Source: Leucoraja ocellata | Taxonomy: Eukaryota | Reading direction: 5' to 3' | Assembly: GCA_036785375.1 (NCBI GenBank) | Contig: JAWMAR010000070.1 | Coordinates: 4,650,001 to 4,714,000 of the forward strand | Length of the DNA: 64,000 nt | Part shown: one piece after another, positions 208 to 19,823 of the stretch | Numbering within the stretch: the stretch's first letter is position 1 | Layout: every line of letters begins with the position of its first letter | Notes under the pieces: model-generated | Told to the model about the DNA's origin: nothing | Databases searched by the model: none | The model's input: the letters and a program-made list of their open reading frames with translations, nothing else | Translations under genes and position numbers: made by a program

Positions 208-530
208 GGGGTGGGACAGTGGAGCAGCGGTAGAGCTGCTGCCTCACAGCGCCAGAGACCTAGATTCAATCCCGACTATGGGTGCTGTCTGTGTAGAGTT
301 TGTACATTCTCCCTGCGACTGCATGGGTTTCCTCCGGGTGCTCCGGTTTCCTCCCACATCCCAAAGACGTACAGGTTTGTAGATTGATCACCTTTGGTAA
401 GAAAAATTGTAAACTGTTTCTAGAGTGTAGAATGGTGCTAGTGTACGGGGTGATCGCTGGTCGGTGCGGATTCAGTGGGCCAAAGGGCCTGTTTCCACAA
501 GTATCTCCAAAAGTAAAAAATAAAAAAATA
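208..530 (+). mobile_element. tRNA-derived HE1/V-SINE-like element (representative; many copies, e.g. about 11071-11390, 49598-49870, 59340-59640, 62458-62728)
   Basis: A/B-box-like head GGTGGCGCAGCGGTAGAG..GGTTCGATCC in the best copies, V-domain core GGAGTTTGTAC(G/A)TTCTCCC..TTTCCTCCCAC, CR1-like 3' end and (TAAAC)n tail. Confidence 0.8.
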
Positions 531-781
531 AAAGGCTGGACTACTTTCATCAGTCAATGAAAATTGGATTACTTTTATTTTACACTCCAAAGACGTACAG
601 GTATGTAGGTAAATTGGCTTGGTAAAAGTAAAAAAAAACTGTTCCTAGTGTGTGTAGGATAGTGTTAATGTGCAAGGATTGCTGATCGGCATGGACTCGG
701 TGGGCTGAAGGGCCTGTTTACTAAACTAATCAGAACTAAATTTAACTGACTAAACAGAACTAAATCTAACTTTGATTAAAC

Positions 782-1176
782 ACCTCCGAACACCTCCGCT
801 CGGTCCACAAGAACCTACCTGACATCCCGTGGCTCAGCACTTCAACTTCCCCTCCCATTCCCATTCCGACCTCTCTGTCCTGGGTCTCCTCCATTGCCAG
901 AGTGAGCAACACCGGAAATTGGAGGAACAGCACCTCATATTTCGCTTGGGGAGTCTGCATCCTGCGGGCATGAACATCGAATTTTCCCAATTTTGTCAGC
1001 CCTTGCTGTCTCCTCCCATCCCCCAGCCCTCGGACTCCTCCTCCTCCTTTTTCCTTCCTTCTCCCCGCCACCCCCTATCAGTCTGAAGAAGGGTTACTGC
1101 CCGAAACGTTGCCTATTTCCTTCGCTCCATAGATGCTGCTGCACCCGCTGAGTTTCTCCACCATTTTTGTGTACCT
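782..1176 (+). mobile_element. Penelope-like element 3' fragment (GIY-YIG C-terminus plus hammerhead-bearing terminal repeat); paralog at about 13790-14176
   Basis: VAQHFN..RKLEEQHLIFRLGSLHPAGMN peptide followed by CTGAAGAAGGG..CCCGAAACGTT. Confidence 0.75.
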
Positions 1177-1230
1177 TAAATTTAACTGAGACAACTTCAA
1201 ATTCTAAAGTTTCATATTTTATCATCAGTC

Positions 1231-1329
1231 TCATTCTGGTTTCACAATCAGGTTTCCTGTTCTCTTCTTCCTCATTCTTAATACATGCCATATTTGACAG
1301 ACTGTTCAGTCTGAGGACTAAGAGCTGAG
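1231..1329 (+). promoter_or_regulatory. Putative proximal promoter of gene A with ETS/PU.1-like TTCCT cores
   Basis: The block TGGTTTCAC..TTTCCTG..TTCTTCCTCATT..AAGAGCTGA lies just upstream of the leader exon and recurs, diverged, upstream of genes B (14229) and C (29575). Confidence 0.55.
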
Positions 1330-1368
1330 CAGCAGGTCAGTGCTAACATGGTCTCCTTGGATAAAACT

Positions 1369-1405
1369 ATGTGGATTCCAATGCTGCTCATTTATTCCAT
1401 GCCCG
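1369..1405 (+). CDS. Gene A exon 1, signal peptide MWIPMLLIYSMP (in-frame upstream ATG at 1348 adds MVSLDKT)
   Basis: Hydrophobic leader ending G|GTAAGT (phase 1); joins the V exon in frame to give ...MPVSGALW. Confidence 0.85.
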
Positions 1406-4400
1406 GTAAGTAACAGCTTGATTTGGACGGTCATGTGACCAGACTCTACGGGAAGTACGAGATAATCACAAAGTGCTGGAGTAACTCAGCGGGACAGCCT
1501 GAAGAAAAGTCTCGACCCGAAATGTCACCCATACCTTCTATCCAGTGATGCTGCCTGTCCCTCTGAGTTACTACAGCATTTTGTGTCTATCTTTGGTGTA
1601 AACCAGCATCTGCAGTTCCTTCCTTTACATATGTTGGAAATACTTAGCAGGTGTGCCGAGAAAAAGAGTTACCCTTTTAGATCAGAGATCCTTTGACCTA
1701 AAACCTAACTCTATCTCTCCCCACAGATGCGCCCTGACCACCTGATTATTTTTTTGTTTTCGTGTTAGATTTTGTTAACCTCCATAGTTTTATTTTGATA
1801 TTCATTTTGGTGACCAGAATGTATCTGGGTCTTGTGTACCATTTCTGCAGTGGAGATAGTTAAATGCTTGCAGATGTAAAGATAACTGAACAATATTGGG
1901 GCGTGGATCAAGAAAGAGGAACTCAGCGGGTCAGCCAGCATCTGTGAATGTGAAGAGGACCCTGTATCGGGACTGAGCAAGGGAGGCAGGAAAGGTTGAA
2001 TCAGGATCGGCAGGTGGGCTTGTGTGGGAGGAGAACACCAGAGGGTGTGAATTACCCAAAATTGGAAAATGTAATGTTTGTACCATTGAGTTTTGAATTA
2101 TCAATCAACATCTTGTGATCTGCTTGTGTATTCTCTATGAAACACATCCTCTTCATCCAGTTCCATCTTCCTCAACCAGCCCCGACCCTCCCACTCTTTA
2201 GTACATCTATATGTTGCCAAACATCTCTGTCCCCTCTCAGTCCTGATGCAGGGTCTCGATCTGAAAGAACAACTTACACTTTTTTGCCTTCAAACCTCCA
2301 TGACCCACTGAGTCCTTCCAGTGTGCTGTTTGTTGTTCCAGATTCCAGCATCTGCAATCTCTTTTGTCTCAATATTAGAGTGTGTTCTTCCAATCTCCTC
2401 CTGTCTCCATCACTGTGCCACACATAAATCATGACCGCCAATGTATCTGACAGCACAAAGCGACTGTGAATGAAAAACAGAGACAATTACAAGTGACTGG
2501 GACAGTGGCACAGCGGTGCCTTACAGTACCAGAGATCTGGGTTCGATCCTGACTAAGGGGTCTGTCTGTATGGAGTTAGTACTTTCTCCCTGTGACCGCA
2601 TGAGTTTTCCCCCAGTCTTCTGGTTTCCTCCCACACCCCAAAGACGCATGGGTTTGTAGGTTAATTGGCCTCTATAAATAGGGAATATGGACTATGTAAA
2701 TTGTCCCTAGTGTACAAGATACTAGGTCAGCACGGACAAGTTGGGCCGAAGGGCCAGTTTCCATGCTCCATCTTAAACTAAACTAAACTAAAGTAACAGT
2801 GTCAAAGTGCAAAGGGACCCTGTCTATTCATGAAACATTGTTTTATTGCTTGCTTGCACTCACTAACAGCAGCCAAGCAATAATGCCAAAACAATTGTCT
2901 CCATTTTACAACACTTCCTCTTATTTAAAGTTCAGATATTAAATTATTTGACGTCTCAGTTCCTCTTGGGCTGTGGGTTGCTCTTGCAATGTAGCCATTT
3001 CCTTCTTGTTCTTGGACGTCAACTATGCATATTTGTCAAAGTCATCAGCATGCAATATTAATAATTTCTTGTTACCAAGTTCATTTTTTTTTCAATGTTA
3101 TCACTGATGCTCAGATGCAGGTGAAGGCCAACATTAACTGTCTTCATTCACCAGATCATTTCCGGTAATCTAGGATCATTCCTATACTAGTTTAGTTTAG
3201 TTTAGTCCAATGAAGTCCAATTATTGATCGTTCAAGGGGGTAAATAGGAGGCCAGGACTGCGCTCTAGCTAGTGAGAAGATGGGTCAGTTGCCTGAAGAC
3301 AGTTGGGAAGAAAACTATCTCTGAATCTAGAGCATTGGGTTCAAACTTCTGTCCCTCGTGCCTAATGGTAGACAGGTAAAGAAGGAGTGACTGGGATGAA
3401 ACTGCTCCATGATTATGCTGGTGGCCTTGCAAGGCAGCGTGAAGTGTAGGTGACTATTTCCTTGTTTATTGATGGGGATGATGGCAAATAAGGTTTACCC
3501 TCCATAAAACAGGCCAACGATATACGTGCATTTGGAGGATAAGGTTGGTGTAGGGATCCACAAGCCTCAGTACTCATCAATAGACAATAGGTGCAGGAGT
3601 AGGCCATTCGGCCCTTCGAGCCAGCACTGCCATGTAAGATTATTGTAAGATTATTGTAAAATTATTTTAAGATTATTAAGGGTTTGGACACGCTAGAGTC
3701 AGGAAACATGTTTCCGATGTTGGGGGAGTCCAGAACCAGGAGCCACAGTTTAAGAATAAGGGGTAAGCCATTTAGAACGGAGATGATCAGCCATGATCAC
3801 ATTGAATGGCGGTGCTGGCTCGAAGGGCCAAATGCCCCACTCCTGCACCTATTGTCTATTGTTTATTGAATGCGATCATGCTTGATCATCCCCAATCAGT
3901 ACCCCTTTCCTGCCTTCTCCCCATATCCCCTAACTATTATCTTTAAGAGCCCTATCTAGCTCTCTCTTGCAAGTTTCCAGAGAATGGGCAGAGAATTCCA
4001 CATACTCACAACTCTCTGTGTTTCCTTGTCTCCGTTCTAAATGGCTTACCCCTTATTCTTAAACTGTGGCCCCTGGTTCTGGACTGCCCCAACATCGGGA
4101 ACATGTTTCCTGTCTCTAGCGTGTCCAAACCCTTAATAATCTTACATGTTTCAATAAGATCCCCTCTCATCCTAAGTTCCAGAGTGTACAAGCCCAGCTG
4201 CTCCATTCTCTCAGCATATGACAGTTCCGCCATCCCGGGGTTTAAACTTGTAAACCTACGCTGCACTCCCTCAATAGAAAGAATCATCTATGTAGATAAA
4301 TGTAGGGGGCGTGGTGAAGTCCTCTGCCGATGAGACAAAGGTCAGCTGGATGGTTGACAGGGAGGAGAAGGCTTTTGACCCCAGGGCATATATAGATGGA

Positions 4401-5731
4401 CAAATCAGTAGGGCAGAAAAGTGGCAAAGCCAGTTTAATCCAGAGAAGTGAGAGGAATTACATTTGACAAAGAGGTCTAAATAAAGACATTAATATATGG
4501 ATGTTGAGGGAGTGTGGAGGAACAGAAGGACCTTGGAGAATATTCTCACAGCTCATTAAATGCAATATGACAATTAGTTAGTTTTAGAGATACAGCCTTG
4601 AACAGGCCCTTCGGCCCACAATGTCCAAGCCGACCAACGATTACCCGTGCACCAGTTCTATCCTACACCCTTGGGGTAATTTACAGAAGCCAATTAACTT
4701 ACAACCTACTCATGTTTGAATTGTGGGAGGAAACTAGAGCACACAGAGGAAACCCATGCGGTCACAGGGAGAACGTACAAATTATGTACAGGCAGCATCC
4801 ATAGTCAGGATCAAACCCGGGTCCTTGGCGCTGTAAGGCAGCCACTCTTCTGCTGTGCTACTGTGCTGCCCAACTAGTGTAAACAGTTAGGACCAAAGAA
4901 CTGCAGGTGCTGGTTTGTACCAAAGATAGAAACAAAGTGCTGGAGTAACTTAGAAGAGTGTCTGAAGAAGGGTCCCAATCCCGAAACATCACGCATTCTA
5001 TTTCTCCAGACATGCTGCCTGACCCGCTGAGTTACTCCAGCACCTTGTGTCTATCTTTAGTGTGAAGAGGACTCGGTGGGCCAAAGGGCGTCTTTCCATG
5101 CTGTATTTTTCAATCAATTCAATCAATAGAAAAATATCTTATGATCATTAAATTCTCCAATTTTACGTTGCACACCCCCCTACCCTCTCTCACTTTCCTG
5201 TGCACCATTTAACCCATGCCTCTTCCTCCCTTTCACCCTGTCCCCTACCAAATATACCCCTCCCTCTGTCTTTACATTTCGCTTCTCATCTCTCCTCATC
5301 TGACAACCTTTTCACCGCTTTTCACCTCCAGTCTTTGTCCACTCGTGAACCAGTCAAAATTCCCCCCTCATCTGTATCCACTTGTTGTGCTGCCTGTCCC
5401 GCTGAGTTACTCCAGCAATTTGTGTCTACCTTCCACCTGTCACTTGCCAGGCTTTATCCCATCTCCACCTCTCTTCCAGCTTTCCCCACCCTACTTTAAT
5501 CAGTCTGAAGCAGGGTCCCAACCCGACACGTCACGTGTCCATTCCCTCCAAAGATGCTGCCAGATCTGCTGAGTTACACGGGCACTTTGTGCTTGGCTCA
5601 AGGGTAAGTGAATGTCCACACACGGGTTGGACCATTCGGCCCATCGTTGATTAGGGGAAGAGTGGGTGGGACAGCAAACGCTGTGTTAAGTAGATTTGTC
5701 CTGTACATGTTCTGATGATTTTTCTTCTCAG

Positions 5732-6049
5732 TTTCAGGTGCTCTGTGGGCAAAGACACCTGTAAGAGGAGTTGTGGGAAAAACTATCACAATCGATTGTC
5801 ACTATGAAGTCTGGTACCGTTCACATACAAAATACTGGTGTCATGGGTGGACTAACTCGTGTTCAGATGTAGTGAAAACAAATGGGCAACACAGACGTGG
5901 AAGATGGTCAATCACAGATAACTCGACACAAGGAATATTTACTGTGACTGTGGAGGGTCTTCTCTCTAGAGATAAAGGATGGTACAGCTGTGGAATTGAT
6001 ACATCTGGCTTGGATCCAATGTTTAACGTTCGGGTCCAAGTATCTGACG
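5732..6049 (+). CDS. Gene A exon 2, CD300/pIgR-like Ig V domain
   Basis: TTTCTTCTCAG acceptor; ITIDC..KYWCHGWTNSC..DKGWYSCG has the canonical V-set Cys/Trp plus the extra KYWC-x6-C pair of CD300/pIgR/TREM domains; donor GACG|GTACGT. Confidence 0.93.
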
Positions 6050-6092
6050 GTACGTTTTACATTTATACCAAGCCAATTAACCTGTAAACCTG

Positions 6093-6506
6093 GGTTACAC
6101 AAAAAAGCTGGAGAAACTCAGCGGGTGCAGCAGCATCTATGGAGCGAAGGAAATAGGCAACGTTTCGGGCCGAAACCCTTCTTCAGACTGATCGGGGGCG
6201 GGGGTGGGTGGGGACATGAAAGGGAAAAGGAGGAGTAGCCAGAAGGCTGGGGGATGGGAGGAGACAGCGGGGGGGGGGGGGGCTGAGGAAGGGGAGGAGA
6301 CAGCAAGGACTAACAAAATTGGGAGAATTCGATGTTCATGCCCCCGGGGTGCAGACTCCCCAAACGGAATATGAGGTGCTGTTCCTCCAATTTCCGGTGC
6401 TGCTCGCTGTGGCCATGGAGGAGACCCAGGACAGAGAGGTCGGAGACGGAGTGGGAGGGGGAGTTGAAGTGCTGAGCCACCGGGAGGTCAGCTTGGTTCT
6501 TGAACC
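6093..6506 (-). mobile_element. Recent Penelope-like insertion specific to gene A intron 2
   Basis: 16-bp target-site duplication TTAACCTGTAAACCTG (6077-6092 and 6507-6522); the site is empty in gene B. Confidence 0.85.
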
Positions 6507-7728
6507 TTAACCTGTAAACCTGTACGTCTTTGGAGTGTGGGGGGGAAACCGAAGTTTTCAGAGAAAACCCAAGCAGGTCAGGGGGAGAATGTACAAACTC
6601 CAGACAGACAGACAGACAAGTACCCGTGGTCATGATCGAACCCGGGTCCCTGGCGCTGTAAGGCAGCAATTCTACAGCTGCGCCACCGTGCCGCCCTTAA
6701 TGATGCACCATAGGGATCAGTGCCGGGATCTTTGAGCTTTGGCCGAATTCTGTTCTTACCCCTCCTGGGAGTGTGCAGATGATGCCCCTGGATCTGGAAT
6801 AATGATGAAACGGCAAACAGGGAAATGTCTTTTATTGTGGAGGAATGAACTGCAGATGCTGTTTTAATCGAACATAGACACAAAATCTATAGATAATATA
6901 GATGCGTCACTGGGTGGCGCCGAGATGGCAGCCTCGCCAGCAGTCTGTGTGTTATTTCGACTTTTTTGTTATTTTCAGTCTGTCTAAAATGTATGTTTTA
7001 ATGTTTCTCTTTGTTTTTTTCATGTGGGGTGTGACGGGAGGGGAGGGGGGTGAGGGGAGGTGAGGTGAGGGGGGGTGAGCGGAGGGGAGGGGGGGGCGAA
7101 CCCGTTTTCAGTCACTTACCGCAACAGAGATGTGATCTTTCCCCGTGTCACGTCTCCGTCCCCTCCCCACGGACTAACAACTGGATGGATGCGGCCTTTC
7201 CTGGAGACCGGGCTGGAGCTTCGCCGCAAGGGCGACGCGGACTTTAACATTGCGGAGCTGTGATCCTTTGCTGAGAATCGCTGTGGAAGCTCTACAACCG
7301 CGGGGCTTGCGGACTTTAATACCGTGAAGCCGCGGAGAGTTTCCGTTCCGCCCCGACTCCGGAGTCTCCATCATCCCGACGAGAGGGCTTGAACATCGGG
7401 CCGTCGGCAGTGGCAGTGCTGAGGGTTCAAGGCCCCGACCACCACGGGTAAACAAAGGAGGAAGATGACTGAACCTTGTTGCCTTCCATCACAGTGAGGA
7501 ATGATGATTCCACTGTGGTGGATGTTTATGTTAAAACTATTGTGTATTGCGTTATGTTTTTAAACTTGTATGGCTGTATGATAACTCAAATACCACTGTA
7601 CCTTAATTGGTGCACGTGACAATATGTGAACTTGAACTTGAAATGTTGGAGTATCTCAGCGGGACAGGCAGCGTCTCTGGAGGGAAGGAATGGGTGACGT
7701 TTCGGCCCGAGACCCATCCTCAGACCCG

Positions 7729-8178
7729 AATGACGAAAGACTGGATAGACTTGGTTTATACTCTCTAGAATGTAGGAGATTGAGAGGGAATCTTATAGAA
7801 ACTTACAAAATTCCTAAGGGGTTGGACAGGCTAGATGCAGGAAGATTGTTCCCGATGTTAGGGAAGTCCAGGACAAGGGGTCACAGCTTAAGGATAAGGG
7901 GGAAATCCTTTAAAACCGAGATGAGAAGAACTTTTTTCACACAGAGAGTGGTGAATCTCTGGAACTCTCTGCCACAGAGGGTAGTTGAGGCCAGTTCATT
8001 GGCTATATTTAAGAGGGAGTTAGATGTGGCCCTTGTGGCTAAGGGGATCAGGGGGTATGGAGAGAAGGCAGGTACGGGATACTGAGTTGGATGATCAGCC
8101 ATGATCATATTGAATGGCGGTGCAGTCTCGAAGGGCTGAATGGCCTACTCCTGCAGCTAATTTCTATGTTTCTATTCT
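7729..8178 (+). mobile_element. CR1/HER1-like LINE 3' fragment, absent from the gene B copy
   Basis: ERLDRLGLYSLE..RTRGHSLRIRG..FFTQRVVNLWNSLP peptide and a TTTCTATG tail. Confidence 0.85.
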
Positions 8179-8282
8179 AAACTTCACCCATTCCTTCTCT
8201 CCAGAGATGCTGCCTGTCCCGCTGAGTTACTCCAGCATATTTTGTCTATCTTTAATTGTCTTTTATTTCCTTTTCTCAACAG

Positions 8283-8388
8283 AACCTGAACCTAATCCTG
8301 GATCGTCAACAACAACAACAGTAGCATTTACTTCAACTACAAAAGTAACATCCGAAAACAATGATCATGCCACCAGTTTCTCTAACAG
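8283..8388 (+). CDS. Gene A exon 3, Ser/Thr/Pro-rich stalk (EPEPNPGSSTTTTVAFTSTTKVTSENNDHATSFSN)
   Basis: Polypyrimidine-CAACAG acceptor; phase 1 in and phase 2 out (AG|GTATAA); same 106-nt length as in gene B. Confidence 0.85.
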
Positions 8389-9530
8389 GTATAATTTTCA
8401 CTTGCTCAAGTTTTGATTGGCCTTGTTTTCAATATGAGAGGTGGAGACACAAGGAACTGTTGATCCATACATAGATAGATAGACAATAGTGCAGGAGTAG
8501 GCCATTCTGCCCTTCGAGCCAGCACTGCCATTCAATGTGATCATGGTTGACCATCCACAATCAGTACCCCGTTCCTGCCTTGTCCCCATATCCCTTGATT
8601 CCGCTAGCCCTAAGAACTCTATCTAATTCTCTTTTGAGTGTATCCAGTGATTCAGCCTGCACTGCCTTCTGAGGCAAAGAATTCCCCAGATTCGCAACTC
8701 TCTGGGTGAAAAGGTTTTCCTCGTCTCAGTTCTAAATGGCCTACCCCTTATTCTTAAACTGTGGCCCCTGATTCTGGACACCCCCAACATCGGGAACATG
8801 TTTCCTGCATCTCACGTGTCCCTTAATAATCCCTTAATAATTTTATATGTGTCTATAAGATACCCTCTCATCCTTCTAAATTCCAGTGAATACAAGCCCA
8901 GTCGCTCCATTCTTTCATCATATGACAGTCCCGCCATCCCGGGAATTAAACTGGCTGGATGCTGGATCCTTGAGTACAACACAAAGTACTGGAGTAACTC
9001 TAGGTTGTCGAGGGTGGCATGGTGGTGCAGCGGTAGAGTTGAAGTTTGAAAACGCACACCTGCAGAGTCAGGGACATTTTCTTCCCAACGGTTATCAGGC
9101 AACTGAATCATCCCCTCACCAGCGATCCTGACCTCCCATCTACCTCATTGGAGATCTTCCAACTTTGTTTCATCAGACTTGCATCTGATCACATAGGATT
9201 TAAGGCACAGAAAAGATCAACTGAACTGATCCCATGCTGGTGTTTACATACCACTCGTCACTTCTCCCATCTTTTCTTATCTAACTTTATCAACGCTAGA
9301 CACAAAATGCTGGAGTAACTCAGCTAGTCAGGCAGCATCTCTGAAGAACATGGATAGGTGAGGTTTCAGGTTGAGATCCTGGATGGTGGAATTTCCCAGC
9401 TGAACTCCCTGGGCTCTGTTGCTGTACCCTGCTCCATGCAGAGATTTCACAACAATCAGGCTATGAATGTTTCCAACACGAACTAGTCTGTTTCCTCCTA
9501 CTGATTCTGTATCTTTCCCCTTTTGCTCAG

Positions 9531-9621
9531 TTACATGATATGGAATGTGGGACGCTGGCTGTACTTCGCTCTGCTTGGGATCTGCAGCATCTCAGTCTCA
9601 TTGTTCACAAGTATAAGGAAG
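9531..9621 (+). CDS. Gene A exon 4, transmembrane exon with Arg (SYMIWNVGRWLYFALLGICSISVSLFTSIRK)
   Basis: TTTTGCTCAG acceptor with phase 2 matching the stalk; AAG|GTATGT donor; hydrophobic helix containing N-x-x-R. Confidence 0.85.
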
Positions 9622-10397
9622 GTATGTTTTGCGGAGATCATCAGAATCGCTGAATGCTTCCAAATGCTGTCCATTAATACCTTCAAACATGCTGATAAAA
9701 TAAAACAAACGAAAAGCGTTTAGATAAAGTACTTCACAAATATAGGCCAAACCAATGCTCTACGAAGATGATATCAATTGGTCTTGACAAGATGTGTGTG
9801 TGCAGAATGAACTGAAGTGTTTGACGTAGATGTTGTAGTGTCATTGAATCAGAGAAATACAACTGGGAAACAGGCCCTTTGACCCACTGTAACAAGCGCA
9901 GACCATCTTATCTGAACCCAATTCCCTCCCCTCTACTTTCAGTTTGAAGAAGGGTCCCGACCTGAAATGTCACCCATCCTTTTTCTCCAGAGATCGTGCC
10001 AGACTCGCTGGGTTACTCCAGCACTTTGTGCCGATCAGGCCATTGATCACCCGTACGCATTAGTTTGATGTTATCCCATTCTCTCATCCCAACTCCCAAC
10101 ACACTAGGGGAAATTCACACTGGCCAATTAACCTGGAAACCCACAAGTCTTTGGGAGGTGGGAGGAAACCGGAGCTCGCGGAGGAAACCCACATGGACAC
10201 AGCGAGAACATGCAAACTCCACACAGATAGCATCAAAGTCAAAATCCAAGCAAATTCTTGGACGTTGGGAGGCAGCAGCTCTATCAGCTGCATCACTGTG
10301 CCAATTGGAACAAGAATTCTGTTGTTAGTGGCCTTGTGAAATAAAGCACAATTCCCGGAGTCAATTATCTGATGACTTCAAACATTTTTTTTTGCAG

Positions 10398-10433
10398 GGA
10401 CCTAATGAACCGAAACCTCACAGCTTGCCGTAG
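10398..10433 (+). CDS. Gene A terminal exon, short cytoplasmic tail GPNEPKPHSLP*
   Basis: TTTTTTTGCAG acceptor, phase 0; the peptide is identical in gene C despite synonymous changes; AATAAA at 10800-10805. Confidence 0.75.
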   Translation, partial: GPNEPKPHSLP

Positions 10434-11541
10434 AAGGCAGAATGAAGATCCACTGGTGATAGTGACTGTGAAACAACTCTCCAACAAGACCAAATGATCA
10501 TTATTATTTTGAATGAATTAATTAATTAATACTTCATTGTCACGTGTGACAAGTCACAGTGAAATTCTTTGCTTGCTAACCCAAGGTATGCAAATAGTCG
10601 CACATAAAGGGCATTGATAAAGTGTTTTTCATTTTGCTTTCATAATAGACTGCACAGAATTAATGCTTCTTCTGCTAAAATTATTAACTTAGTTTACACA
10701 ATATTCACTCAGTAAAGGTGCCATTTAAACAATGTTGCTAGCCTTTATAGCAATGACTTATTATTTTGTGTTGTGTAGCATGACATTGCAGTTATGTGGA
10801 ATAAATTGTATTCAATCCTGGAAATGCCTCATGGTTTTAACTGTGAAGAATATTTAGAAGAGGGAAACTATAAGCTATGACATCCCATCAGATCAAATGT
10901 TCTGGAACTACTTTTTCTCATGAGAACATCACTGTAATATACTTTGCTGAGCTGTTTTCAAGTCAAGTCTGTCATTCTTATGTGCACGTATGGTGAGGTG
11001 CAGATACAATGAAAATCGCACTTGTGGCAACATCACATACACGTAGACACACAAAAATATAAATGATACATAGGGCGGCACGGGTGTATAGCGGTGGTGT
11101 TGCTGCCTTCATTTCAGCGCCAGGGACGCGGGTTCGATACGGGTGCTGTCTGTACGGAGTTTGTATGTTCTCCCCATGACCAAGTGGGTTTTCTCTGAGA
11201 TCTTTGGTTTCTTCCCACACTCAAAGACGTGCAGGTTTTTAGGTTAATTGGCTTTGGTAAAATTGTAAATTGACCCTAGTGTATGCAGGATAGTGCTGGT
11301 GTGCGGAGGAGATAGCTGGTTGGCGTCAACTAGGTGGGCCAAAGGTCCTGTTTCCATGCTGTATCTCTAAACTAAACTCAACTCAACTAAGACGTCCAAT
11401 TCCACTCAAGGAAAGTCACCGTATCTCTCAAACTAATTGGCACTTTACTCAAAGCAATGGGTTCCATCTGACAATCTTGTTCTCTTTATTCACTGCATGT
11501 GAAAACAGCTGAGACTTAATTTTATTTCCTTGCCTCAACAG

Positions 11542-11812
11542 AACTTGAATAAACTTATGAAGGAATGATGAATGAATGATGAATGAATAGGTTTATGAAT
11601 GAATAGGTTTATTGACCAAGTATTCACATACAAGGAATTTGCCTTGGTGCTCCGCACGCAATTGCAATGTGACACACAGTGACATTATGAATGACACCTA
11701 AAACATTAAACATTAACAATAACATATATTTTTATAACAGAACCAATGACAACCACACTATCTCCAATTACAAAATTGATATCAACAGTATTCAAAACAA
11801 ATATAGTGCAAG
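11542..11812 (+). pseudogene. Orphan stalk-like exon relic downstream of gene A (copy at about 41607-41870 downstream of gene C)
   Basis: The acceptor TATTTCCTTGCCTCAACAG resembles the stalk acceptors; the relic is interrupted by a (GAAT)n-type insertion; 11741-11812 reads EPMTTTLSPITKLISTVFKTNIVQ with an AAG|GTATAT donor. Confidence 0.4.
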
Positions 11813-14366
11813 GTATATTCTTCTCATAATTTTTTTTACGCACTGGAACTGAATCCATGTCGAGGACATTTGGTCGATTTTGTATTGTTTTGTATTGTAT
11901 TGTTAAACGCAAGCGTTTAGTGTGCTTGATTGTCATATCACGTCAACTAAGATGCCCCATCTACTCTAGTTCCTCCTGCCAGCGTTTGGTCCATCTCCTA
12001 CTAAACTAGTCCAATTCATGTAACTGTCCAAATGCCTTTAAAATGTTTTTGTAGCACCTGCCTCAACTACCTCATCAGTTAGCTCATTCCATACACCCAC
12101 AACTCACTGTGTAAAAAAATGATGCCCCTCAGGATCCTATGAAATATTTCCCCTTTCACCTGAAGCCTTGTCCCCTGGGTCTTGATTCCCCTGCTCTAGG
12201 TAAGATACTTGTTTCCCTTGTTACCCTTGTTTCCCTTTCCCCTAACTTTGTCTGAAGAAAGGTCTTGACTCAAAACATCACCTATTTCTTTACTCCAAAG
12301 ATGCTGCCTCACCCAATGAATAACTCTAGGTTTTTGAGTCAATCTTCGGTTTTAACGAGCATCTGCAGTTCCTTCATAGAAACATAGAAACATAGCATAA
12401 GGTGCAATAATAATTTAAAATATAAATAATACCAGGATCTGGTAACGGGGGGTATAAAATACATTAAAAAAAAAAAACACGGTTGGTATATCCTTTCTTG
12501 CGAGTTTTGTGTTACAATAGAGCGATTGTTTTTCCTTTTCTTTCTTTTCTTTTTAGGGTCTTATTTCCTTTCTTTACTTCCTTCTCTAACTTCTTCCCTA
12601 AGGGGCTTTCTTTTCCCAACACTTTCCTGCACCTTCACGATTCTTGCTCACTTTCCTTACTTCTTTTATTTCTATCTATTTTTAAAAATAACAAAAAAAA
12701 ATTAAAAAAATTAAAAATTGTTTTAAAAAAAAAAGAAAAGAAACATAGAAAATAGGTGCAGGAGTAGGCCATTCGGCCCTTCGAGCCTGCACCGCCATTC
12801 AATATGATCATGGCTGATCATCCAACTCAGTATCCTGTGCCTGCCATCTCTCCATACCCCATGATATCTTTAGCCACAAGGGCCACATCTAACTCCCTTT
12901 TAAATATAGCCAATGAACTGGCCTCAACAACCTCCTGTGGCACAGAATTCCAGAGATTCACCACTCTTTGTCACCTGCCCGCTGTTCCTGACGCTAAAGC
13001 CTTGGGATCGTTGCCCTTCGTGTTGGCATGGAGCGGGAGGGGAATATTGTGCTGTTTGGTCACCCCCTGCTAATCCCAGGGACAGGGAGACACAGCGGCT
13101 TTTGAGACTGGTGGGCAATCACTTCCAAAGTGGCTGCCCACAGTCAGTACACCTGTCCTACACTTGTCTCCCGCACTAAGATCATCCCGCAGAGAATGAT
13201 CCCAGCCTAACCCAAGAGCCATGTCACCCCAGACAGATTAAAGACGCCCGCCCCCTCTCACAGCGCCAGAGACCTAGATTCAATCCCGACTATGGGTGCT
13301 GTCCGTGCAGAGTTTGTACATTCTCCCTGCGACTGCATGGGTTTCCTCCGGGTGCTCCGGTTTCCTCCCACATCCCAAAGACGTACAGGTTTGTTGGTTG
13401 AATCCTTTGGTAAGAAAAATTGTAAACTGTTTCTAGAGTGTAGAATGGTGCTAGTGTGCGGGGTCATCGCTGGTCGGTGCGGACTTAGTGGGACAAAGGG
13501 CCTCTTTCCACAATTATCTCCAAAAGTAAAAAATAAAAAAATAAAAGGCTGGACTATATACATCAGTCAATGAAAATTGGATTACTTTTATTTTACACTC
13601 CAGACGTACAGGTATGTAGGTAAATTGGCTTGGTAAAAGTAAAAAAACTGTCCCTAGTGTGTGTAGGATAGTGTTAATGTGCAAGGATTGCTGATCGGCA
13701 TGGACTCGGTGGGCCGAAGGACCTGTTTACTAAACTAATCAGAACTAAATTTAACTGACTAAACAGAACTAAATCTAACTTTTATTAAACACCTTCGCTC
13801 GGTCCGCAAGAACCTACCTGACCTCCCGTGGCTCAACACTTCAACTCTCCCTCCCATTCCCATTCCGACCTCTCTGTCCTGGGTCTCCTCCATTGCCAGA
13901 GTGAGCAACACCGGAAATTGGAGGAACAGCACCTCATATTTCGCCTGGGGAGTCTGCATCCTGCGGGCATGAACATCGAATTCTTCCAATTTTGTCAGCC
14001 CTTGCTGTCTCCTCCCCTTCCCTCAGCCCTCGGGCTTCTCCTCCTCCTTTTTCCTTCCTTCTCCCCGCCACCCCCTATCAGTCTGAAGAAGGGTTTCGGC
14101 CCGAAACGTTGCCTATTTCCTTCGCTCCATAGATGCTGCTGCAGCCGCTGAGTTTCTCCACCATTTTTGTGTACCTTAAATTTAACTGAGACAACTTCAA
14201 ATTCTAAAGTTTCAGATTTTATCATGTCTCATTCTGGTTTCACAATCAGGTTTCCTGTTCCCTTCTTCCTCATTCTTAATACATGCCATATTTGTCAGAC
14301 CGTTCAGTCTGAGGACTAAGAACTGATCAGCAGGTCAGTGCTAACATGGTCTCCTTGGATAAAACT

Positions 14367-14403
14367 ATGTGGATTCCAATGCTGCTCATTTATTCCCTGC
14401 CCG
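14367..14403 (+). CDS. Gene B exon 1, signal peptide MWIPMLLIYSLP (upstream in-frame ATG at 14346)
   Basis: Copy of the gene A leader with a G|GTAAGT donor. Confidence 0.85.
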
Positions 14404-17400
14404 GTAAGTAACAGCTTGATTTGGACGGTCATGTGACCAGACTCTACGGGAAGTATGAGATAGTCACAACGTGCTGGAGTAACTCAGCGGGACAGGCTGA
14501 AGAAAAGTCTCGACCCGAAATGTCACCCATACCTTCTATCCAGTGATGCTGCCTGTCCCTCTGAGTTACTCCAGCATTTTGTGTCTATCTTCGGTGTAAA
14601 CCAGCATCTGCAGTTCCTTCCTTTACATATGCTGGAAATACTTAGCAGGTGTGCCGAGAAAAAGAGTTACCCTTTCAGATCAGAGATCCTTCGACCTAAA
14701 ACCTAACTTTATCTCTCCCCACAGATGCGCCCTGACCACCTGATTATTTTTTTGTTTTCGTGTTAGATTTTGTTAACCGCCATAGTTTTATTTTGATATT
14801 CATTTTGGTGATCAGAATGTAACTGGGTCTTGTGTACCATTTCTGCAGTGGAGATAGTTAAATGCTTGCAGATGTAAAGATAACTGAACAATATTGGGGC
14901 GTGGATCAAGAAAGAGGAACTCAGTGGGTCAGCCTGCATCTGTGAATGTGAAGAGGACCCTGTATCGGGACTGAGCAAGGGAGGCAGGAAAGGTTGAATC
15001 AGGATCGGCAGGTGGGCTTGTGTGTGAGGAGAACACCAGAGGGTGTGAATTACCCAAAATTGGAAAATGTAATGTTTGTACCATTGAGTTTTGAACTATC
15101 AATCAACATCTCATGTTCTGCTTGTGTATTCTCTATCAAACACATCCTCTTCATCCAGTTCCATCTTCCTCAACCAGCCCCAACCCTCCCACCCATTAGT
15201 ACATCTATATGTTGCCAAACATCTCTGTCTCCTCTCAGTCCTGATGCAGGGTCTCGATCTGAAAGAACAACTTACACTTTACTTTTTTGCCTTCAAACCT
15301 CCATGACCCACTGAGTCCTTTCAGTGTGCTGTTTGTTGTTCCAGATTCCAGCATCTGCAATCTCTTTTGTCTCAATATTAGAGTGTGGTCTTCCAATCTC
15401 CTCCTGTCTCCATCACTGTGCCACACATAAATCATGGCCGCCAATGTATCTGACAGCACAAAGCGACTGTGAATGAAAAACAGAGACAATTACAAGTGAC
15501 TGGGACAGTGGCACAGCGGTGCCTTACAGTACCAGAGACCTGGGTTCAATCCTAACTAAGGGGACTGTCTGTAGGGAGTTTGCACTTTCACCCTGTGACC
15601 GCATGGGTTTTTTACCCAGTCCCCTGGTTTCCTCCCACATCCCAAAGACGCACAGATTTGTAGGTTAATTGGCCTCTAAAAATAGGGAATAAGGACTATG
15701 TAAATTGTCCCTAGTGTACAAGATACTAGGTCAGCACGGTCACGTTGGGCCAAAGGGCCAGTTTCCATGCTCTATCTTAAACTAAACTAAACTAAAGTAA
15801 CGGTGTCAAAGTGCAAAGGGACCCTGTCTATTCATGAAACATTGTTTTATTGCTTGCTTGCACTCACTAACAGCAGCCAAGCAATAATGCCAAAACAATT
15901 GTCTCCATTTTACAACACTTCCTCTTATTTAAAGTTCAGATGTTGTTTGACGTCCAGTTCCTCTTGGGCTGTGGGTTGCTCTTGCAATGTAACCATTTCC
16001 TTCTTGTTCTTGGACATCAACTATGCATATTTGTCAAAGTCATCAGCATGCAATATTAATAATTTATTGTTACCAAGTAAATTCTTTTTTTCAATGTTAT
16101 CACTGATGCTCAGATGCAGGTGAAGGCCAACATTAACTGTCTTCATTCACCAGATCATTTCCGGTAATCTAGTATCATTGCTTTACTAGTTTAGTTTAGT
16201 TTAGTCCAAAGAAGTCCAATTATTGATTGTTCAAGGGGGTAAATAGGAGGCCAGGACTGCGCTCTAGCTACTGAGAGGATGGGTCAGTTGCCTGATAACA
16301 GTTGGTAAGAAAACTGTCTCTGAATCTAGAGCATTGGGTTCAAACTTCTGTTCCTCGTGCCTAATGGTAGACAGGTAAAGAAGGAGTGACTGAGATGAAA
16401 CTGCTCCATGATTATGCTGGTGGCCTTGCAAGGCAGCGTGAAGTGTAGGTGACTATTTCCTTGTTTATAGATGGGGATGATGGCAAATAAGGTTTACCCT
16501 CCATAAAACAGGCCAACGATATACGTGCATTTGGGGGATAAGGTTGTTGTAGGGATCCACAAGCCTCAGTACTCATCAATAGACAATAGGTGCAGGAGTA
16601 GGCCATTCGGCCCTTCGAGCTAGCACTGCCATGTAAGATTATTGTAAAATTATTTTAAGATTATTAAGGGTTTGGTCACGCTAGAGGCAGGAAACATGTT
16701 TCCGATGTTGGGGGAGTCCAGAACCAGGAGCTACAGTTTAAGAATAAGGGGTAAGCCATTTAGAACGGAGATGATCAGCCATGATCACATTGAATGGCGG
16801 TGCTGGCTCGAAGGGCCAAATGCCCTACTCCTGCACCTATTGTCTATTGTCCATTGTTTATTGAATGCGATCATGCTTGATCATCCCCAATCAGTACCCC
16901 TTTCCTGCCTTCTCCCCATATCCCCTAACTATTATCTTTAAGAGCCCTATCTAGCTCTCTCTTGCAAGTTTCCAGAGAATGGGCAGAGAATTCCACATAC
17001 TCACAACTCTCTGTGTTTCCTTGTCTCCGTTCTAAATGGCTTACCCCTTATTCTTAAACTGTGGCCCCTGGTTCTGGACTCCCCCAACATCGGGAACATG
17101 TTTCCTGTCTCTAGTGTCTCAGCATCCATAGTCAGGATCAAACCCGGGTCCTTGGCGCTGTAAGGCAGCCACTCTTCTGCTGTGCTACTGTGCTGCCCAA
17201 CTGGTGTAAACAGTTAGGACCAAAGAACTGCAGGTGCTGGTTTGTACCAAAGATAGAAACAAAGTGCTGGAGTAACTTAGAAGGGTGTCTGAAGAAGGGT
17301 CCCAATCCCGAAACATCACGCATTCTATTTCTCCAGACATGCTGCCTGACCCGCTGAGTTACTCCAGCACCTTGTGTCTATCTTTAGTGTGAAGAGGACT

Positions 17401-18058
17401 CGATGGGCCAAAGGGCACCTTTCCATGCTGTATTTTTCAATCAATTCAATCAATAGAAAAATATCTTATGATCATTAAATTCTCCAATTTTACATTGCAC
17501 ATCCCCCTACCCTCTCTCACTTTCCTGTGCACCATTTAACCCATGCCTCTTCCTCCCTTTCACCCTGTCCCCTACCAAATATACCCCTCCCTCTGTCTTT
17601 ACATTTCGCTTCTCATCTCTCCTCATCTGACAACCTTTTCACCGCTTTTCACCTCCAGTCTTTGTCCACTCGTGAACCAGTCAAAATTCCCCCCTCATCT
17701 GTATCCACTTGTTGTGCTGCCTGTCCCGCTGAGTTACTCCAGCAATTTGTGTCTACCTTCCACCTGTCACTTGCCAGGCTTTATCCCATCTCCACCTCTC
17801 TTCCAGCTTTCCCCACCCTACTTTAATCAGTCTGAAGCAGGGTCCCAACCCGACACGTCACGTGTCCATTCCCTCCACAGATGCTGCCAGATCTGCTGAG
17901 TTACACGGGCACTTTGTGCTTGGCTCAAGGGTAAGTGAATGTCCACACACGGGTTGGACCATTCGGCCCATCGTTGATTAGGGGATGAGTGGATGGGACA
18001 ACAAACGCTGTGTTAAGTAGATTTGTCCTGTACATGTTCTGATGATTTTTCTTCTCAG

Positions 18059-18376
18059 TTTCAGGTGCTCTGACGGCAAATACACCTGTAAGAGGAGTTG
18101 TGGGGAAAAATATCACAATCGATTGTTACTATGTAGCACGGTACCGTTCACACACAAAATACTGGTGTCATGGGTGGACTCGCTCGTGTTCAGTTGTAGT
18201 GAAAACAAATGGGCAACACAGACGTGGAAGAGCGTCAATCACAGATAACCCGGCACAAGGAATATTTACTGTGACTGTGGAGGATTTTCTCTCTAGCGAT
18301 ACAGGATGGTACAGCTGTGGAATTGATACATCTGGCTTGGATCCATTGTTTAACGTTCAGGTCCAAGTATCTGACG
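18059..18376 (+). CDS. Gene B exon 2, CD300/pIgR-like Ig V domain
   Basis: 318 nt with the same splice sites as the gene A V exon; KYWCHGWTRSC and DTGWYSCG motifs. Confidence 0.93.
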
Positions 18377-19717
18377 GTACGTTTTACATTTATACCAAGC
18401 CAATTAACCTGTAAACCTGTACGTCTTTGGAGTGTGGGGGGAAACCGACGTTTTCAGAGAAACCCCACGCAGGTCACAGGGAGAATGTACAAACTCCAGA
18501 CAGACAGACAGACAAGTACCCGTGGTCATGATCGAACCCGGGTCCCTGGCGCTGTAAGGCAGCAATTCTACAACTGCGCCACCGTGCCGCCCTTAATGAT
18601 GCACCATAGGGATCAGTGCCGGGATCTTTGCTGTTTGGCCGAATTCTGTTCTTACCCCTCCTGGGAGTGTGCAGATGATGCCCCTGGATCTTGAATAATG
18701 ATGAAACGGCAAACAGGGAAATGTCTTTTATTGTGTTGGAAAGAACTGCAGATGCTGTTTTAATCGAACATAGACACACAATCTATAGAGCAGATAGATG
18801 CGTCACTGGGTGGCGCCGAGATGGCAGCCTCGCCAGCAGCCTGTGTGTTAGTTCGACTTTTTTGTTATTTTCAGTCTGTCTAAAATGTATGTTTTAATGT
18901 TTCTCTGTGTTTTTTAATGTGGGGGGTGAGGGGAGGGGGGGGTGAGGGGAGGGGGGGGGGGGGGGTGAGGGGAGGGGGGGGGGGGGGTGAGGGGAGGCCG
19001 AAACCGTTTTCAGTCACTTACCGCAACAGAGATGTGATCTTTCCCCGTGTCACGTCTCCGTCCCCTCCCCGCGGACTAACAAGTGGATGGATGCGGCCTT
19101 TCCTGGAGACCGGGCTGGATCTTCGCCGCAAGGGCGACGCGGACTTTAACATTGCGGAGCTGTGATCCTTTGCTGAGGATCGCTGTGGAAGCTCCCCGAC
19201 CGCGGGGCTTGTGGACTTTAATACCGTGAAGCCGCGGAGTGTTTCCGTTCCGCCCCGACGCCGGAGTCTCCATCATCCCGACGAGAGGGCTTGAACATCG
19301 GGCCGTCGGCAGTGGCAGTGCTGAGGGTTCAAGGCCCCGACCACCACGGGTAAACAAAGGAGGAAGATGACTGAACCTTGTTGCCTTCCATCACAGTGAG
19401 GAATGATGATTCCACTGTGGTGGATGTTTATGTTAAAACTATTGTGTATTGCATTATGTTTTTAAACTGGTATGGCTGTATGATAACTCAAATACCACTG
19501 TACCTTAATTGGTGCACGTGACAATATGCGAACATGAACTTGAAATGTTGGAGTATCTCAGCGGGACAGGCAGACAGGGTGATGTGTCGGCCCGAGACCC
19601 ATCCTCAGACCCAAAACTTCACCCATTCCTTCTCTCCAGAGATGCTGCCTGTCCCGCTGAGTTACTCCAGCATATTTTGTCTATCTTTAATTGTCTTTTA
19701 TTTCCTTTTCTCAACAG

Positions 19718-19823
19718 AACCTGAACCTAATCCTGGATCGTCAACAACAACAACAGTAGCATTTACTTCAACTACAAAAGTAACATCCGAAAACAATGAT
19801 CGTGCGACCAGTTCCTCTAACAG
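19718..19823 (+). CDS. Gene B exon 3, mucin-like stalk
   Basis: Near-identical to the gene A stalk exon; CAACAG acceptor and AG|GTATAA donor. Confidence 0.85.

What the first reader, a model, noticed from the sequence alone, without database searches (positions are those of the whole stretch)
9040..9300. Gene A is a chimera: gene B ectodomain fused to gene C activating module at a breakpoint near 9181
Seen: up to ..CATCAGACTT (9180) the sequence tracks gene B intron 3 (to about 20672). From CATCTGATCACATAGG (9182) it switches to gene C sequence (39244 onward). Both parental stalk-TM introns are phase 2, so the fusion is in frame. Inference: a new activating receptor arose by intronic module swapping, a nucleotide-level record of how paired receptors originate.
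Basis: partly seen in the sequence, partly recalled or inferred. Interest (0 to 1): 0.88.

Follow-up and report, generated by a model that had tools for sequence, protein, structure and literature searches.

The report
Chimeric skate immune receptor gene
A skate immune-receptor gene was made by joining the front half of an inhibitory receptor gene to the membrane anchor of a neighbouring activating one; this is a known way of making paired receptors, and here the join can be read to the base.

Summary
Gene A (243-12375, + strand) follows gene B (13257-20672) up to base 9180. From 9182 it follows gene C (39244-42500).

All three genes are CD300/pIgR-like V-set receptors of a skate.
- B has an uncharged TM and a tail with ITIM/ITSM-like motifs.
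- C has V, a second Ig domain, its own stalk, an N-x-x-R TM and an 11-residue tail.
- A has B's leader, V and stalk, and C's TM and tail. Its five exons sum to 609 nt, in frame.

A's junction is the derived state. A retroposon that is continuous in B is cut off at 9180 in A.

Both arms have the same age: 3.30% (A-B) and 3.09% (A-C) noncoding divergence. The best fit is a duplicated B-C block that lost 18.6 kb by a non-homologous join.

A spliced protein with exactly this architecture, P0153, exists in a public assembly.

No laid contig was shown crossing 9107-9182. Contigs of two samples start exactly at 9182.

The closest precedent is the primate chimeric gene FCGR2C, so this is a new member of a known kind. 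Expression of A itself and its adaptor coupling are untested.

The parts
243..9180 (+). 5' arm of gene A, a paralogous copy of gene B 13257-20672 (upstream region, leader, V, stalk and part of intron 3)
   Evidence: 222 substitutions in 6735 aligned noncoding bases (3.30%).
1348..1405 (+). Gene A leader exon (58 nt, phase 1 out, donor GTAAGT)
   Evidence: tblastn with P0029 and P0038; sequence read.
5732..6049 (+). Gene A V-set Ig exon (318 nt, phase 1 in and out)
   Evidence: Pfam V-set E = 7e-08. PDB hits to pIgR and CD300 chains. Splice sites read.
6093..6506 (+). Repeat insertion private to A, flanked by a 16-nt target-site duplication (6077-6092 and 6507-6522); B has the empty site
8283..8388 (+). 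Gene A stalk exon (106 nt, phase 1 in, phase 2 out); B-type, 3 nt differences from B 19718-19823
9041..9180 (+). Fragment of a retroposon ('TE2') whose 3' part is missing in A. B's copy (20552-20836) and two other copies run on past this point
9181..9182 (+). Breakpoint. 9180 is the last B-like base, 9181 (G) matches neither parent, and 9182 is the first C-like base. No shared homology across the join
9182..12375 (+). 3' arm of gene A, a paralogous copy of gene C 39244-42500 (rest of the intron, TM exon, tail exon and downstream sequence)
   Evidence: 92 substitutions in 2974 aligned noncoding bases (3.09%).
9531..9621 (+). Gene A TM exon (91 nt, phase 2 in, phase 0 out) with N-V-G-R at the start of the hydrophobic stretch; 0 of 91 nt differ from C 39593-39683
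10398..10433 (+). Gene A last coding exon: an 11-residue tail without tyrosine, plus the stop codon
   Evidence: An RNA-like contig of run X20 joins the TM exon to this exon.
12376..13256 (+). 881-nt spacer between the end of the A block and the start of the B block. It holds low-complexity sequence, a repeat fragment (12721-12971) and 285 nt that match nothing else in the window
13257..24274 (+). Gene B, inhibitory type. Exons: leader 14346-14403, V 18059-18376, stalk 19718-19823, uncharged TM 22425-22510, cytoplasmic 23372-23418 and 24014-24274. The tail carries IVYATL, TVYAEV, VTYSEV and SIYATV
20673..39243 (+). The 18,571 nt of the B-C block that have no counterpart in A. They hold B's TM and tail exons and C's leader, V, Ig2 and stalk exons
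29695..40491 (+). Gene C, activating type. Exons: leader 29695-29752, V 34928-35248, second Ig about 36972-37295, stalk 38280-38382, TM 39593-39683, tail 40456-40491. An N run at 33046-33273 lies in intron 1 and was left untouched

Best explanation
Gene A is a real chimeric receptor gene in a skate cluster of CD300/pIgR-like genes.

Origin. A block holding an inhibitory gene (B) and the next activating gene (C) was duplicated in tandem. In the left copy, 18.6 kb running from B's stalk-TM intron to C's stalk-TM intron is missing. The ends were joined without homology, inside a retroposon on the B side. This happened either in a second step or as part of one complex event. Both introns are phase 2, so B's leader, V and stalk exons now splice in frame to C's TM and tail exons.

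Predicted product. The protein has 202 residues. It carries a B-like ligand-binding domain on a TM with an N-x-x-R motif and an 11-residue tail with no signalling motif. It should therefore signal through an ITAM adaptor of the FcR-gamma type, opposite in sign to B, whose tail has ITIM/ITSM-like motifs. After the event the V exons of A and B diverged mainly by amino-acid changes.

Shown: the mosaic, the breakpoint, the direction of change, the equal age of the arms, the intact frame and the existence of an A-type spliced product.

Inferred: the order of duplication and loss, transcription of this particular copy, adaptor coupling and opposite signalling.
For: - Mosaic and breakpoint.
- Direction: TE2 is continuous across B 20672 and in two other copies (61400-61720 reverse strand, 28130-28345), but stops at A 9180. 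TE2's A-rich tail lies on the missing side, so the A copy cannot be a primary insertion.
P0002 (Rhinoraja longicauda) follows it with an uncharged TM and an ITIM-type tail. P0153 follows it with the arginine-bearing (N-x-x-R) TM. P0029 is a truncated model. C's stalk occurs in 2 (P0038, Amblyraja radiata; P0154, R. longicauda), both followed by the arginine-bearing TM.
- Same age of the arms: 222/6735 = 3.30 +/- 0.22% (A-B) and 92/2974 = 3.09 +/- 0.32% (A-C).
- Block ends: at 243/13257 a SINE is whole in A and lacks its first ~38 nt in B. Homology with C stops sharply at 12375/42500.
- A is an independent locus: it has its own repeat insertion with a 16-nt target-site duplication.
- Frame: exons of 58+318+106+91+36 = 609 nt, with canonical AG/GT at every boundary.
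- Product: P0153 has 191 residues on a 1028-nt contig. It reads V, A/B stalk (32/34 identical to A), a Ser junction codon, a TM identical to A and C, and the same tail. Such a contig can only be spliced RNA.
- Reads: contigs carrying A-specific alleles lie on both sides of the join in X1 and X2. In both samples a contig starts exactly at 9182, as expected where two left contexts meet a shared 34 nt.
- N-x-x-R TMs associate with FcR-gamma in Xenopus and mammals (PMC2413239 and PMC4536121, passages read).
- V exon: 24/318 nt differ against 11/1085 in the flanking intron (Fisher p = 6e-9). 18 codons change the residue and 2 are silent. dN = 0.092, dS = 0.042.
Against: - No laid contig was shown crossing 9107-9182. 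The output was flooded by repeats, with 473,079 pieces not listed. Physical continuity therefore rests on the assembly and on indirect signs.
- No transcript specific to this copy was seen. The one RNA-like contig of the window's species label (X20) that joins the TM and tail exons differs from A by 9 letters and an 8-nt insert. It comes from C or another paralogue. Its 33 letters upstream of the TM exon were not placed.
- P0153's V domain is only 80% identical to A's. It is an orthologue or paralogue, not this gene, and the A-type architecture may be older than 3% divergence suggests.
- Divergence along the A-B arm is uneven: 0-1.2% around the V exon and 4.8% elsewhere. Gene conversion has therefore acted, and this blurs the dating.
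- The 881-nt spacer at the block junction is not explained by a plain tandem duplication.
- An intact 609-nt frame after about 3% divergence is only weak evidence of function.
Confidence: 0.78

Rival explanations
1. The A-type gene is an older, established lineage. The 95-97% similarity to B on the left and to C on the right comes from later gene conversion (concerted evolution), so the breakpoint marks an old fusion or the edges of conversion tracts, not a recent birth.
For: - P0153 has the A-type architecture with a V domain only 80% identical to A and 81% to B.
- Divergence is patchy: 11/981 around the V exon against 56/1163 in 6507-7671.
- In the V tree, A, B, P0029, P0153 and the C-type P0038 fall into one unresolved group, which suggests exon exchange.
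Against: - Homology runs for 9 kb and 3.2 kb through introns and shared repeats. It ends at sharp points inside or at the end of repeats. That is long for conversion tracts.
- Both arms have the same divergence.
- This rival changes the date, not the chimeric origin. The truncated TE2 still marks a physical join.
Confidence: 0.12
2. The join at 9181 is an assembly error. Two different genes (a B-like one and a C-like one) were stitched together.
For: No listed contig crosses 9107-9182. The region is dense in repeats, and an N run elsewhere in the window shows the assembly is not gapless.
Against: - The two sides share no sequence at the join, so an assembler has nothing to mis-overlap there.
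- Contigs with A-specific alleles in two samples begin exactly at 9182.
- A differs from B and C by about 3% and has private insertions, so it is not a collapsed or duplicated haplotype.
- P0153 shows the same exon combination in a spliced product.
Confidence: 0.05
3. A is a real chimera but a silent by-product of cluster turnover. It is not transcribed or not functional and is on its way to decay.
For: No RNA specific to A was found. By my own rough estimate, an intact frame after about 1.6% change per lineage is expected fairly often by chance. A young repeat sits 44 nt after the V exon donor.
Against: - All five exons are open with canonical splice sites.
- No indel lies in 609 coding nt, whereas noncoding sequence shows about 0.3 gap openings per 100 nt.
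- The V exon shows excess amino-acid change, not random decay.
- The upstream region is copied with the gene.
- An A-type product is expressed somewhere.
Confidence: 0.15
4. A has the ancestral arrangement, and B and C are the recombinants.
For: None specific. A keeps 30 nt of TE2's 5' end that B lacks.
Against: - TE2 lacks its 3' part in A but is complete across the breakpoint in B.
- The B-type and C-type architectures occur in a different skate family with more diverged sequence. The stalk is 58% identical in P0002.
- This rival needs two precise events instead of one.
Confidence: 0.02

Closest known systems
FCGR2C of humans and African apes (chimeric gene of FCGR2B and FCGR2A)
   Same: The extracellular part comes from an inhibitory receptor gene and the signalling part from an activating neighbour. 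The gene arose together with a segmental duplication of the cluster and serves as its marker (PMC6563257, abstract and passages read).
   Different: FCGR2C arose by non-allelic homologous recombination between two similar genes and sits at the link between the two duplicated modules. Here the join has no homology (retroposon against unique intron). The hybrid is the left copy of a duplicated block with an 18.6-kb internal loss. The activating part is a charged TM for an adaptor, not a tail with its own ITAM-like motif.
CD300A/CD300C and other mammalian CD300 (CMRF35-like) paired receptors
   Same: The V-set domain belongs to the same family: CD300 chains match at E = 2e-18 to 5e-14 and pIgR down to 1e-40. 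RefSeq names the skate relatives CMRF35-like or pIgR-like. One partner has ITIMs and the other a charged TM and a short tail. The ectodomains are kept similar.
   Different: In primates the similarity is ascribed to gene conversion of the ectodomain (PMC12447643), not to a mapped fusion. CD300C carries a glutamate in its TM (passage); the skate gene carries arginine in an N-x-x-R motif. Orthology to any mammalian CD300 gene was not tested.
Receptors with an N-x-x-R TM that couple to FcR-gamma (LILRA2, PIR-A, NKp46, GPVI, OSCAR, Fc-alpha-R, Xenopus XFL)
   Same: The N-x-x-R motif sits at the N-terminal end of the TM, followed by a short tail. This motif was shown to mediate FcR-gamma association for Xenopus XFL (PMC2413239, passages read; PMC4536121).
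   Different: Those receptors belong to the LRC/FcR-like families, not to the CD300/pIgR-like family. Association with an adaptor is untested for the skate protein.
Domain and exon shuffling in paired-receptor families (Xenopus FcR-like, CEACAM)
   Same: Intergenic exon recombination and birth-and-death turnover are the stated mode of evolution (PMC2413239, passages; CEACAM papers seen only as search listings and abstracts).
   Different: Those inferences come mostly from trees of domains. Here the junction, its repeat context and the block ends can be read directly.

Membership tests
CD300 / pIgR-like V-set receptors | An N-terminal V-set Ig domain most similar to pIgR and CD300 domains | tested here: met
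   Pfam V-set hits for A, B and C (E = 7e-08, 2e-09, 1e-11). The best PDB sequence matches are pIgR (1e-40) and CMRF35-like molecules (2e-18). The nearest named proteins are 'CMRF35-like molecule' and 'polymeric immunoglobulin receptor-like' of skates and rays.
CD300 / pIgR-like V-set receptors | Orthology or conserved synteny with the vertebrate CD300 or PIGR loci | not tested
Paired activating/inhibitory receptors | Two neighbouring genes with closely related ectodomains | tested here: met
   A and B are adjacent. V is 83% identical in protein. The stalk differs at 3 of 106 nt. The introns are 95-97% identical.
Paired activating/inhibitory receptors | One partner has an uncharged TM and cytoplasmic ITIM/ITSM motifs | tested here: met
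   B has an uncharged TM. Its tail carries IVYATL, TVYAEV, VTYSEV and SIYATV. This is a match at motif level only.
Paired activating/inhibitory receptors | The other partner has a charged TM residue and a short tail without signalling motifs | tested here: met
   A has arginine within the N-V-G-R motif in its TM and an 11-residue tail without tyrosine.
Paired activating/inhibitory receptors | Shared or related ligand and opposite signalling | not testable with these tools
   This needs binding and signalling assays.
FCGR2C-type chimeric genes | 5' part from an inhibitory gene and 3' part from an activating gene of the same cluster | tested here: met
FCGR2C-type chimeric genes | Made by homologous unequal crossing-over (NAHR) between the two parents | tested here: not met
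   There is no similarity between B 20673 onward and C 39244 onward, or between the two left sides. B and C align only in exons and repeats.
FCGR2C-type chimeric genes | The hybrid lies at the link between the two duplicated modules | tested here: not met
   The gene order is A-B-C. One unequal crossover in a B-C array would give a C5'/B3' hybrid lying between B and C. A is the left block copy with an internal loss.
FcR-gamma-coupled N-x-x-R TM receptors | N-x-x-R at the N-terminal end of the TM segment | tested here: met
   The motif is present in the TM exon translation. The same TM type occurs in 17 of the 161 stored relatives.
FcR-gamma-coupled N-x-x-R TM receptors | Physical association with FcR-gamma that depends on the arginine | not testable with these tools
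   This needs co-expression and co-precipitation.

The most novel reading that the evidence does not exclude
The junction is a base-resolved, non-homologous birth of an activating partner from an inhibitory CD300-like receptor in a cartilaginous fish. On this reading it is shared by several skate species and is expressed. It was followed by adaptive divergence of the ligand-binding V domain while the surrounding intron stayed nearly unchanged. That would make it a natural time series for the idea that activating partners arise from inhibitory receptors and then evolve away from them, in the oldest living jawed-vertebrate lineage.
Probability: 0.35. Interest if true: 0.6.

Novelty: new member of a known kind. 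Interest (0 to 1): 0.45.

Why it matters
Paired receptors are usually explained by domain trees and gene conversion. Few cases show the physical join. Here four things can be read directly:
- the two parents lie next to the product;
- the breakpoint is known to within one base;
- a truncated retroposon gives the direction of change;
- the two arms date the event to one time.

This gives simple tests: PCR across the join in related skates, and RNA across the stalk-TM splice. It also gives a natural pair (A and B) in which to ask whether the V domain of a newborn activating receptor moves away from that of its inhibitory parent.

The CD300/pIgR-like cluster of cartilaginous fish appears undescribed in the searched literature. 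Searches found 4 papers mentioning both CD300 and cartilaginous fish, none with cartilaginous fish in the title (listings and abstract starts only); one search was mis-aimed and says nothing either way.

The principle is not new, so the value is that of a clean example, not a new mechanism.

Tried and rejected
- Orthologous loci. The look-up of encoding contigs was called for P0038 and P0029 to fetch such loci and test whether the junction and C's continuity exist in other skates. The question stays open.
- Reads. Read laying was run at 90% likeness so that a second species could be laid. Repeats flooded the output, and no piece across 9107-9182 was listed. Cross-species presence of the junction could not be read from X4. 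Depth-based copy counts were not used.
- V-domain tree. A tree of 12 V domains gave no resolved branch. It has 0 starred branches of 9, and one 84/89 group holding A, B, P0029, P0153 and P0038. It supports only 'A's V is not C's V'.
- More A-type proteins. Two searches for further A-type proteins found only P0153 (13 hits, 11). The length filter hides longer fused models. Not all 13 and 11 hits were read one by one, but all stored proteins were screened by BLAST with the stalk and TM exons.
- Source of P0153. The look-up gave no accession.
- One unequal crossover between B and C. Rejected, because it predicts a C5'/B3' hybrid between B and C.
- A 'C-A-B' model with an upstream C. Rejected, because A's upstream 1-242 does not match B's upstream 13015-13256.
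- The 881-nt spacer and the 30-nt/75-nt difference at 9040. These remain unexplained.
- Scan notes. The search of earlier findings by words returned nothing.
- Literature. One search was badly aimed and gave only unrelated elasmobranch papers. Supplementary files of papers were not consulted. Those of PMC6563257 may hold breakpoint details of FCGR2C that bear on the comparison.
- Spliced model. The model of A was never joined. The V exon was searched alone. Stalk, TM and tail exon translations were compared one by one. Only exon lengths were summed.
Full report
**What is there**

The window is repeat-rich, and its receptor genes lie on the + strand. A self-comparison shows that the first 12 kb are a mosaic of two later parts of the window.
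- A 243-9039 matches B 13257-20476 in four collinear blocks of 94.3-97.3% identity. These blocks are interrupted by three stretches present only in A.
- A 9182-12375 matches C 39244-42500 (96.1% over 2722 columns, then 89.9% over 437).

A follows B up to 9180 (B 20672). Base 9181 matches neither parent. From 9182 A follows C (39244). The two parents share no similarity at that point.

The last 111 B-like bases carry 10 substitutions and an 8-nt gap.

**The genes**

Three V-set exons were found by motif and confirmed with Pfam. A search of 1.84 billion representatives with A's V exon alone gave 2483 relatives. The closest named ones are 'CMRF35-like molecule' and 'polymeric immunoglobulin receptor-like' proteins of skates and rays: Leucoraja erinacea, Amblyraja radiata, Rhinoraja longicauda and Mobula. 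The genome is therefore that of a skate or close relative; the species was not determined. The best solved relatives are pIgR domains and CD300 family chains.

Laying these proteins on the window with tblastn and reading the splice sites gives three models.
- Gene A: leader 1348-1405, V 5732-6049, stalk 8283-8388, TM 9531-9621, tail 10398-10433.
- Gene B: leader 14346-14403, V 18059-18376, stalk 19718-19823, uncharged TM 22425-22510, and two cytoplasmic exons (23372-23418, 24014-24274). The tail carries four tyrosine motifs of ITIM/ITSM form.
- Gene C: leader 29695-29752, V 34928-35248, a second Ig exon near 36972-37295, its own stalk 38280-38382, TM 39593-39683, tail 40456-40491.

The TM exon of A and C has N-V-G-R at the start of the hydrophobic stretch. 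The tail has 11 residues and no tyrosine.

The stalk donors of A, B and C all leave two bases, and all three TM exons begin with the third base of a codon. A's exons sum to 609 nt and B's to 876 nt, both multiples of three. The spliced model was handled exon by exon, and only lengths were added.

**Which arrangement is derived**

On the B side the breakpoint lies inside a retroposon, here called TE2. In B this element runs from 20552 to 20836 and ends in an A-rich tail. Two other copies in the window (61400-61720 on the reverse strand, and 28130-28345) also continue past the point that corresponds to A 9180. A's copy stops there. A retroposon copy that keeps its 5' part and lacks its 3' tail cannot be a primary insertion (established knowledge of target-primed reverse transcription). 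A's junction is therefore secondary.

I screened all 161 stored relatives with the single exon translations.
- The A/B-type stalk occurs in 3 proteins. P0002 of R. longicauda follows it with a B-like uncharged TM and an ITIM tail, and its stalk is only 58% identical. P0153 follows it with the arginine-bearing (N-x-x-R) TM. P0029 is a truncated model.
- C's stalk occurs in 2 proteins, both followed by the arginine-bearing TM.

The B-type and C-type arrangements therefore exist in other skates, one of them in a different family and with diverged sequence. The A type is known only with nearly identical stalk and TM.

**How it arose**

Counting substitutions only, the two arms are equally old: 222/6735 = 3.30 +/- 0.22% for A-B and 92/2974 = 3.09 +/- 0.32% for A-C.

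At the left end of the homology (243/13257) a SINE is complete in A and lacks about 38 nt of its head in B. At the right end, homology with C stops abruptly at 12375/42500, at the end of a repeat.

The order A-B-C excludes one unequal crossover between B and C, which would leave a C5'/B3' hybrid between them. The pattern fits a tandem duplication of a block of about 29.2 kb (13257-42500). Its left copy keeps the original upstream flank and lacks 18,571 nt (the equivalent of 20673-39243).

Whether the loss came later or was part of one complex replicative event cannot be told. An 881-nt spacer (12376-13256) between the two copies is not explained.

The join is of the end-joining kind, with no homology and one unassigned base. 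This differs from the homologous recombination that made FCGR2C (PMC6563257, abstract and passages read).

**Is it real**

A is not a duplicated haplotype. It differs from its parents by about 3%. It also carries a private 414-nt repeat insertion with a 16-nt target-site duplication, where B has the empty site.

Contigs of public runs were laid on 7700-10700. In two samples of the same species label (X1, X2), contigs with A-specific alleles lie left of the join (X1: 9001-9107, 2 mismatches) and right of it. The right-hand contigs are 9182-9320 in X1 with 0 mismatches and 9182-9319 in X2 with 1 mismatch, and they cover five sites where A and C differ.

Both right-hand contigs start exactly at 9182. 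That is what a de Bruijn assembly does where two different left contexts meet a stretch shared by A and C (34 nt identical). This is my inference, not a direct observation. No listed piece crosses 9107-9182, most pieces were not listed, and the single call is used.

The strongest independent support is P0153. It is a 191-residue protein from a 1028-nt contig of a Logan assembly. It reads V, A/B-type stalk (32 of 34 residues as in A, 30 of 34 as in B), a serine at the splice, the identical TM and the identical tail. In the window these exons span 4.7 kb, so that contig must be spliced RNA. Its V domain is only 80% identical to A's, so it is an orthologue or paralogue, not this copy.

One RNA-like contig of the window's species label (X20) joins the TM exon to the tail exon. 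It differs from A by 9 letters and an 8-nt insert, so it says nothing about A itself.

**What it probably does**

B has the features of an inhibitory receptor. A has those of an adaptor-dependent activating receptor with a closely related binding domain.

N-x-x-R TMs are the FcR-gamma-coupling type in mammals, and this was shown experimentally for Xenopus FcR-like receptors (PMC2413239 and PMC4536121, passages read). Coupling in the skate is inferred.

After the event the V exons of A and B diverged at 24 of 318 nt, while the adjoining intron differs at 11 of 1085 (p = 6e-9). Eighteen codons change the residue and two are silent, with dN 0.092 and dS 0.042. On these counts dN/dS above 1 is not significant by itself. 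Import of patches from other family members by exon-limited conversion is an alternative to point-wise selection. Several of the variant residues recur in other family members.

**Comparison and novelty**

The closest precedent is FCGR2C. It combines the ectodomain of an inhibitory gene with the signalling part of an activating neighbour, and it was born with a segmental duplication.

Ectodomain homogenisation between CD300A and CD300C (PMC12447643) and exon recombination in Xenopus FcR-like genes show that the general theme is well known.

What is particular here is threefold:
- the family and lineage (CD300/pIgR-like genes of a skate, not described in the papers found);
- the non-homologous join inside an intron;
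- the fact that parents, product, direction and relative date can all be read in one 43-kb stretch.

I file it as a new member of a known kind.

**Limits**

- Physical continuity across the join was not directly shown.
- Expression of this copy, adaptor coupling and ligand were not tested.
- Dating is relative only and is blurred by conversion.
- Earlier notes of this scan on the same window (V-exon divergence, N-x-x-R motif) agree with what I measured. They are not independent evidence.

Noticed in passing
window 4793-6092 versus 17120-18419: The V exons of A and B differ at 24 of 318 nt (18 residue changes, 2 silent codons, 4 codons with two changes). The 981 nt of intron around them differ at 11. 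Elsewhere the same arm differs by 4.8%. This looks like a recent conversion tract with selection on V, or exon-limited import from other paralogues.
   Followed up: partly
window 9040-9069 versus 20477-20551: Just left of the breakpoint, A keeps 30 nt of the 5' end of TE2 that B lacks. B keeps 75 nt of the preceding SINE that A lacks. This needs two adjacent losses or a small conversion patch from another repeat copy.
   Followed up: partly
window 12376-13256: An 881-nt spacer lies between the end of the A block and the start of the B block. It holds low-complexity sequence, a repeat fragment and 285 nt that match nothing else in the window. A plain tandem duplication does not explain it.
   Followed up: partly
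window 6093-6506: A young repeat (93-95% identical to copies at 55888-56538) inserted 44 nt after A's V exon donor, with a 16-nt target-site duplication. It is absent from B.
   Followed up: yes
window 8389-8416 and 19824-19851: Reading through the stalk exon donor gives the same short open extension and stop in A and B. The RefSeq model of Leucoraja erinacea (P0029, 169 aa) ends in exactly this read-through. A secreted isoform is possible, or it may be a truncated gene model.
   Followed up: no
P0038 (Amblyraja radiata) versus window genes: P0038 has C's architecture: second Ig domain, C-type stalk 97% identical, TM identical. Its leader and V domain, however, group with A and B (80%) and not with C (75%). 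V exons appear to move between architectures in this family.
   Followed up: partly
window 43133-49651: A tandem repeat with a unit of about 2.85 kb in roughly 2.3 copies (97.9-98.1% identical) lies directly downstream of the end of the C block.
   Followed up: no
window 10469: The window has T here. The contigs counted at this place in all four runs read A, as in gene C, including an otherwise A-specific contig of X2. This may be a private allele or a consensus error in the 3' untranslated part of A.
   Followed up: no
window 10400-10665 (run X20): An RNA-like contig joins the TM exon to the tail exon. It has an 8-nt AATT-type insert where C has 16 nt more than A. This points to a third allele or paralogue of the activating module that is expressed.
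   Followed up: no
window 33046-33273: An N run of 228 bases lies in intron 1 of gene C, between its leader and V exons. It was left untouched.
   Followed up: no
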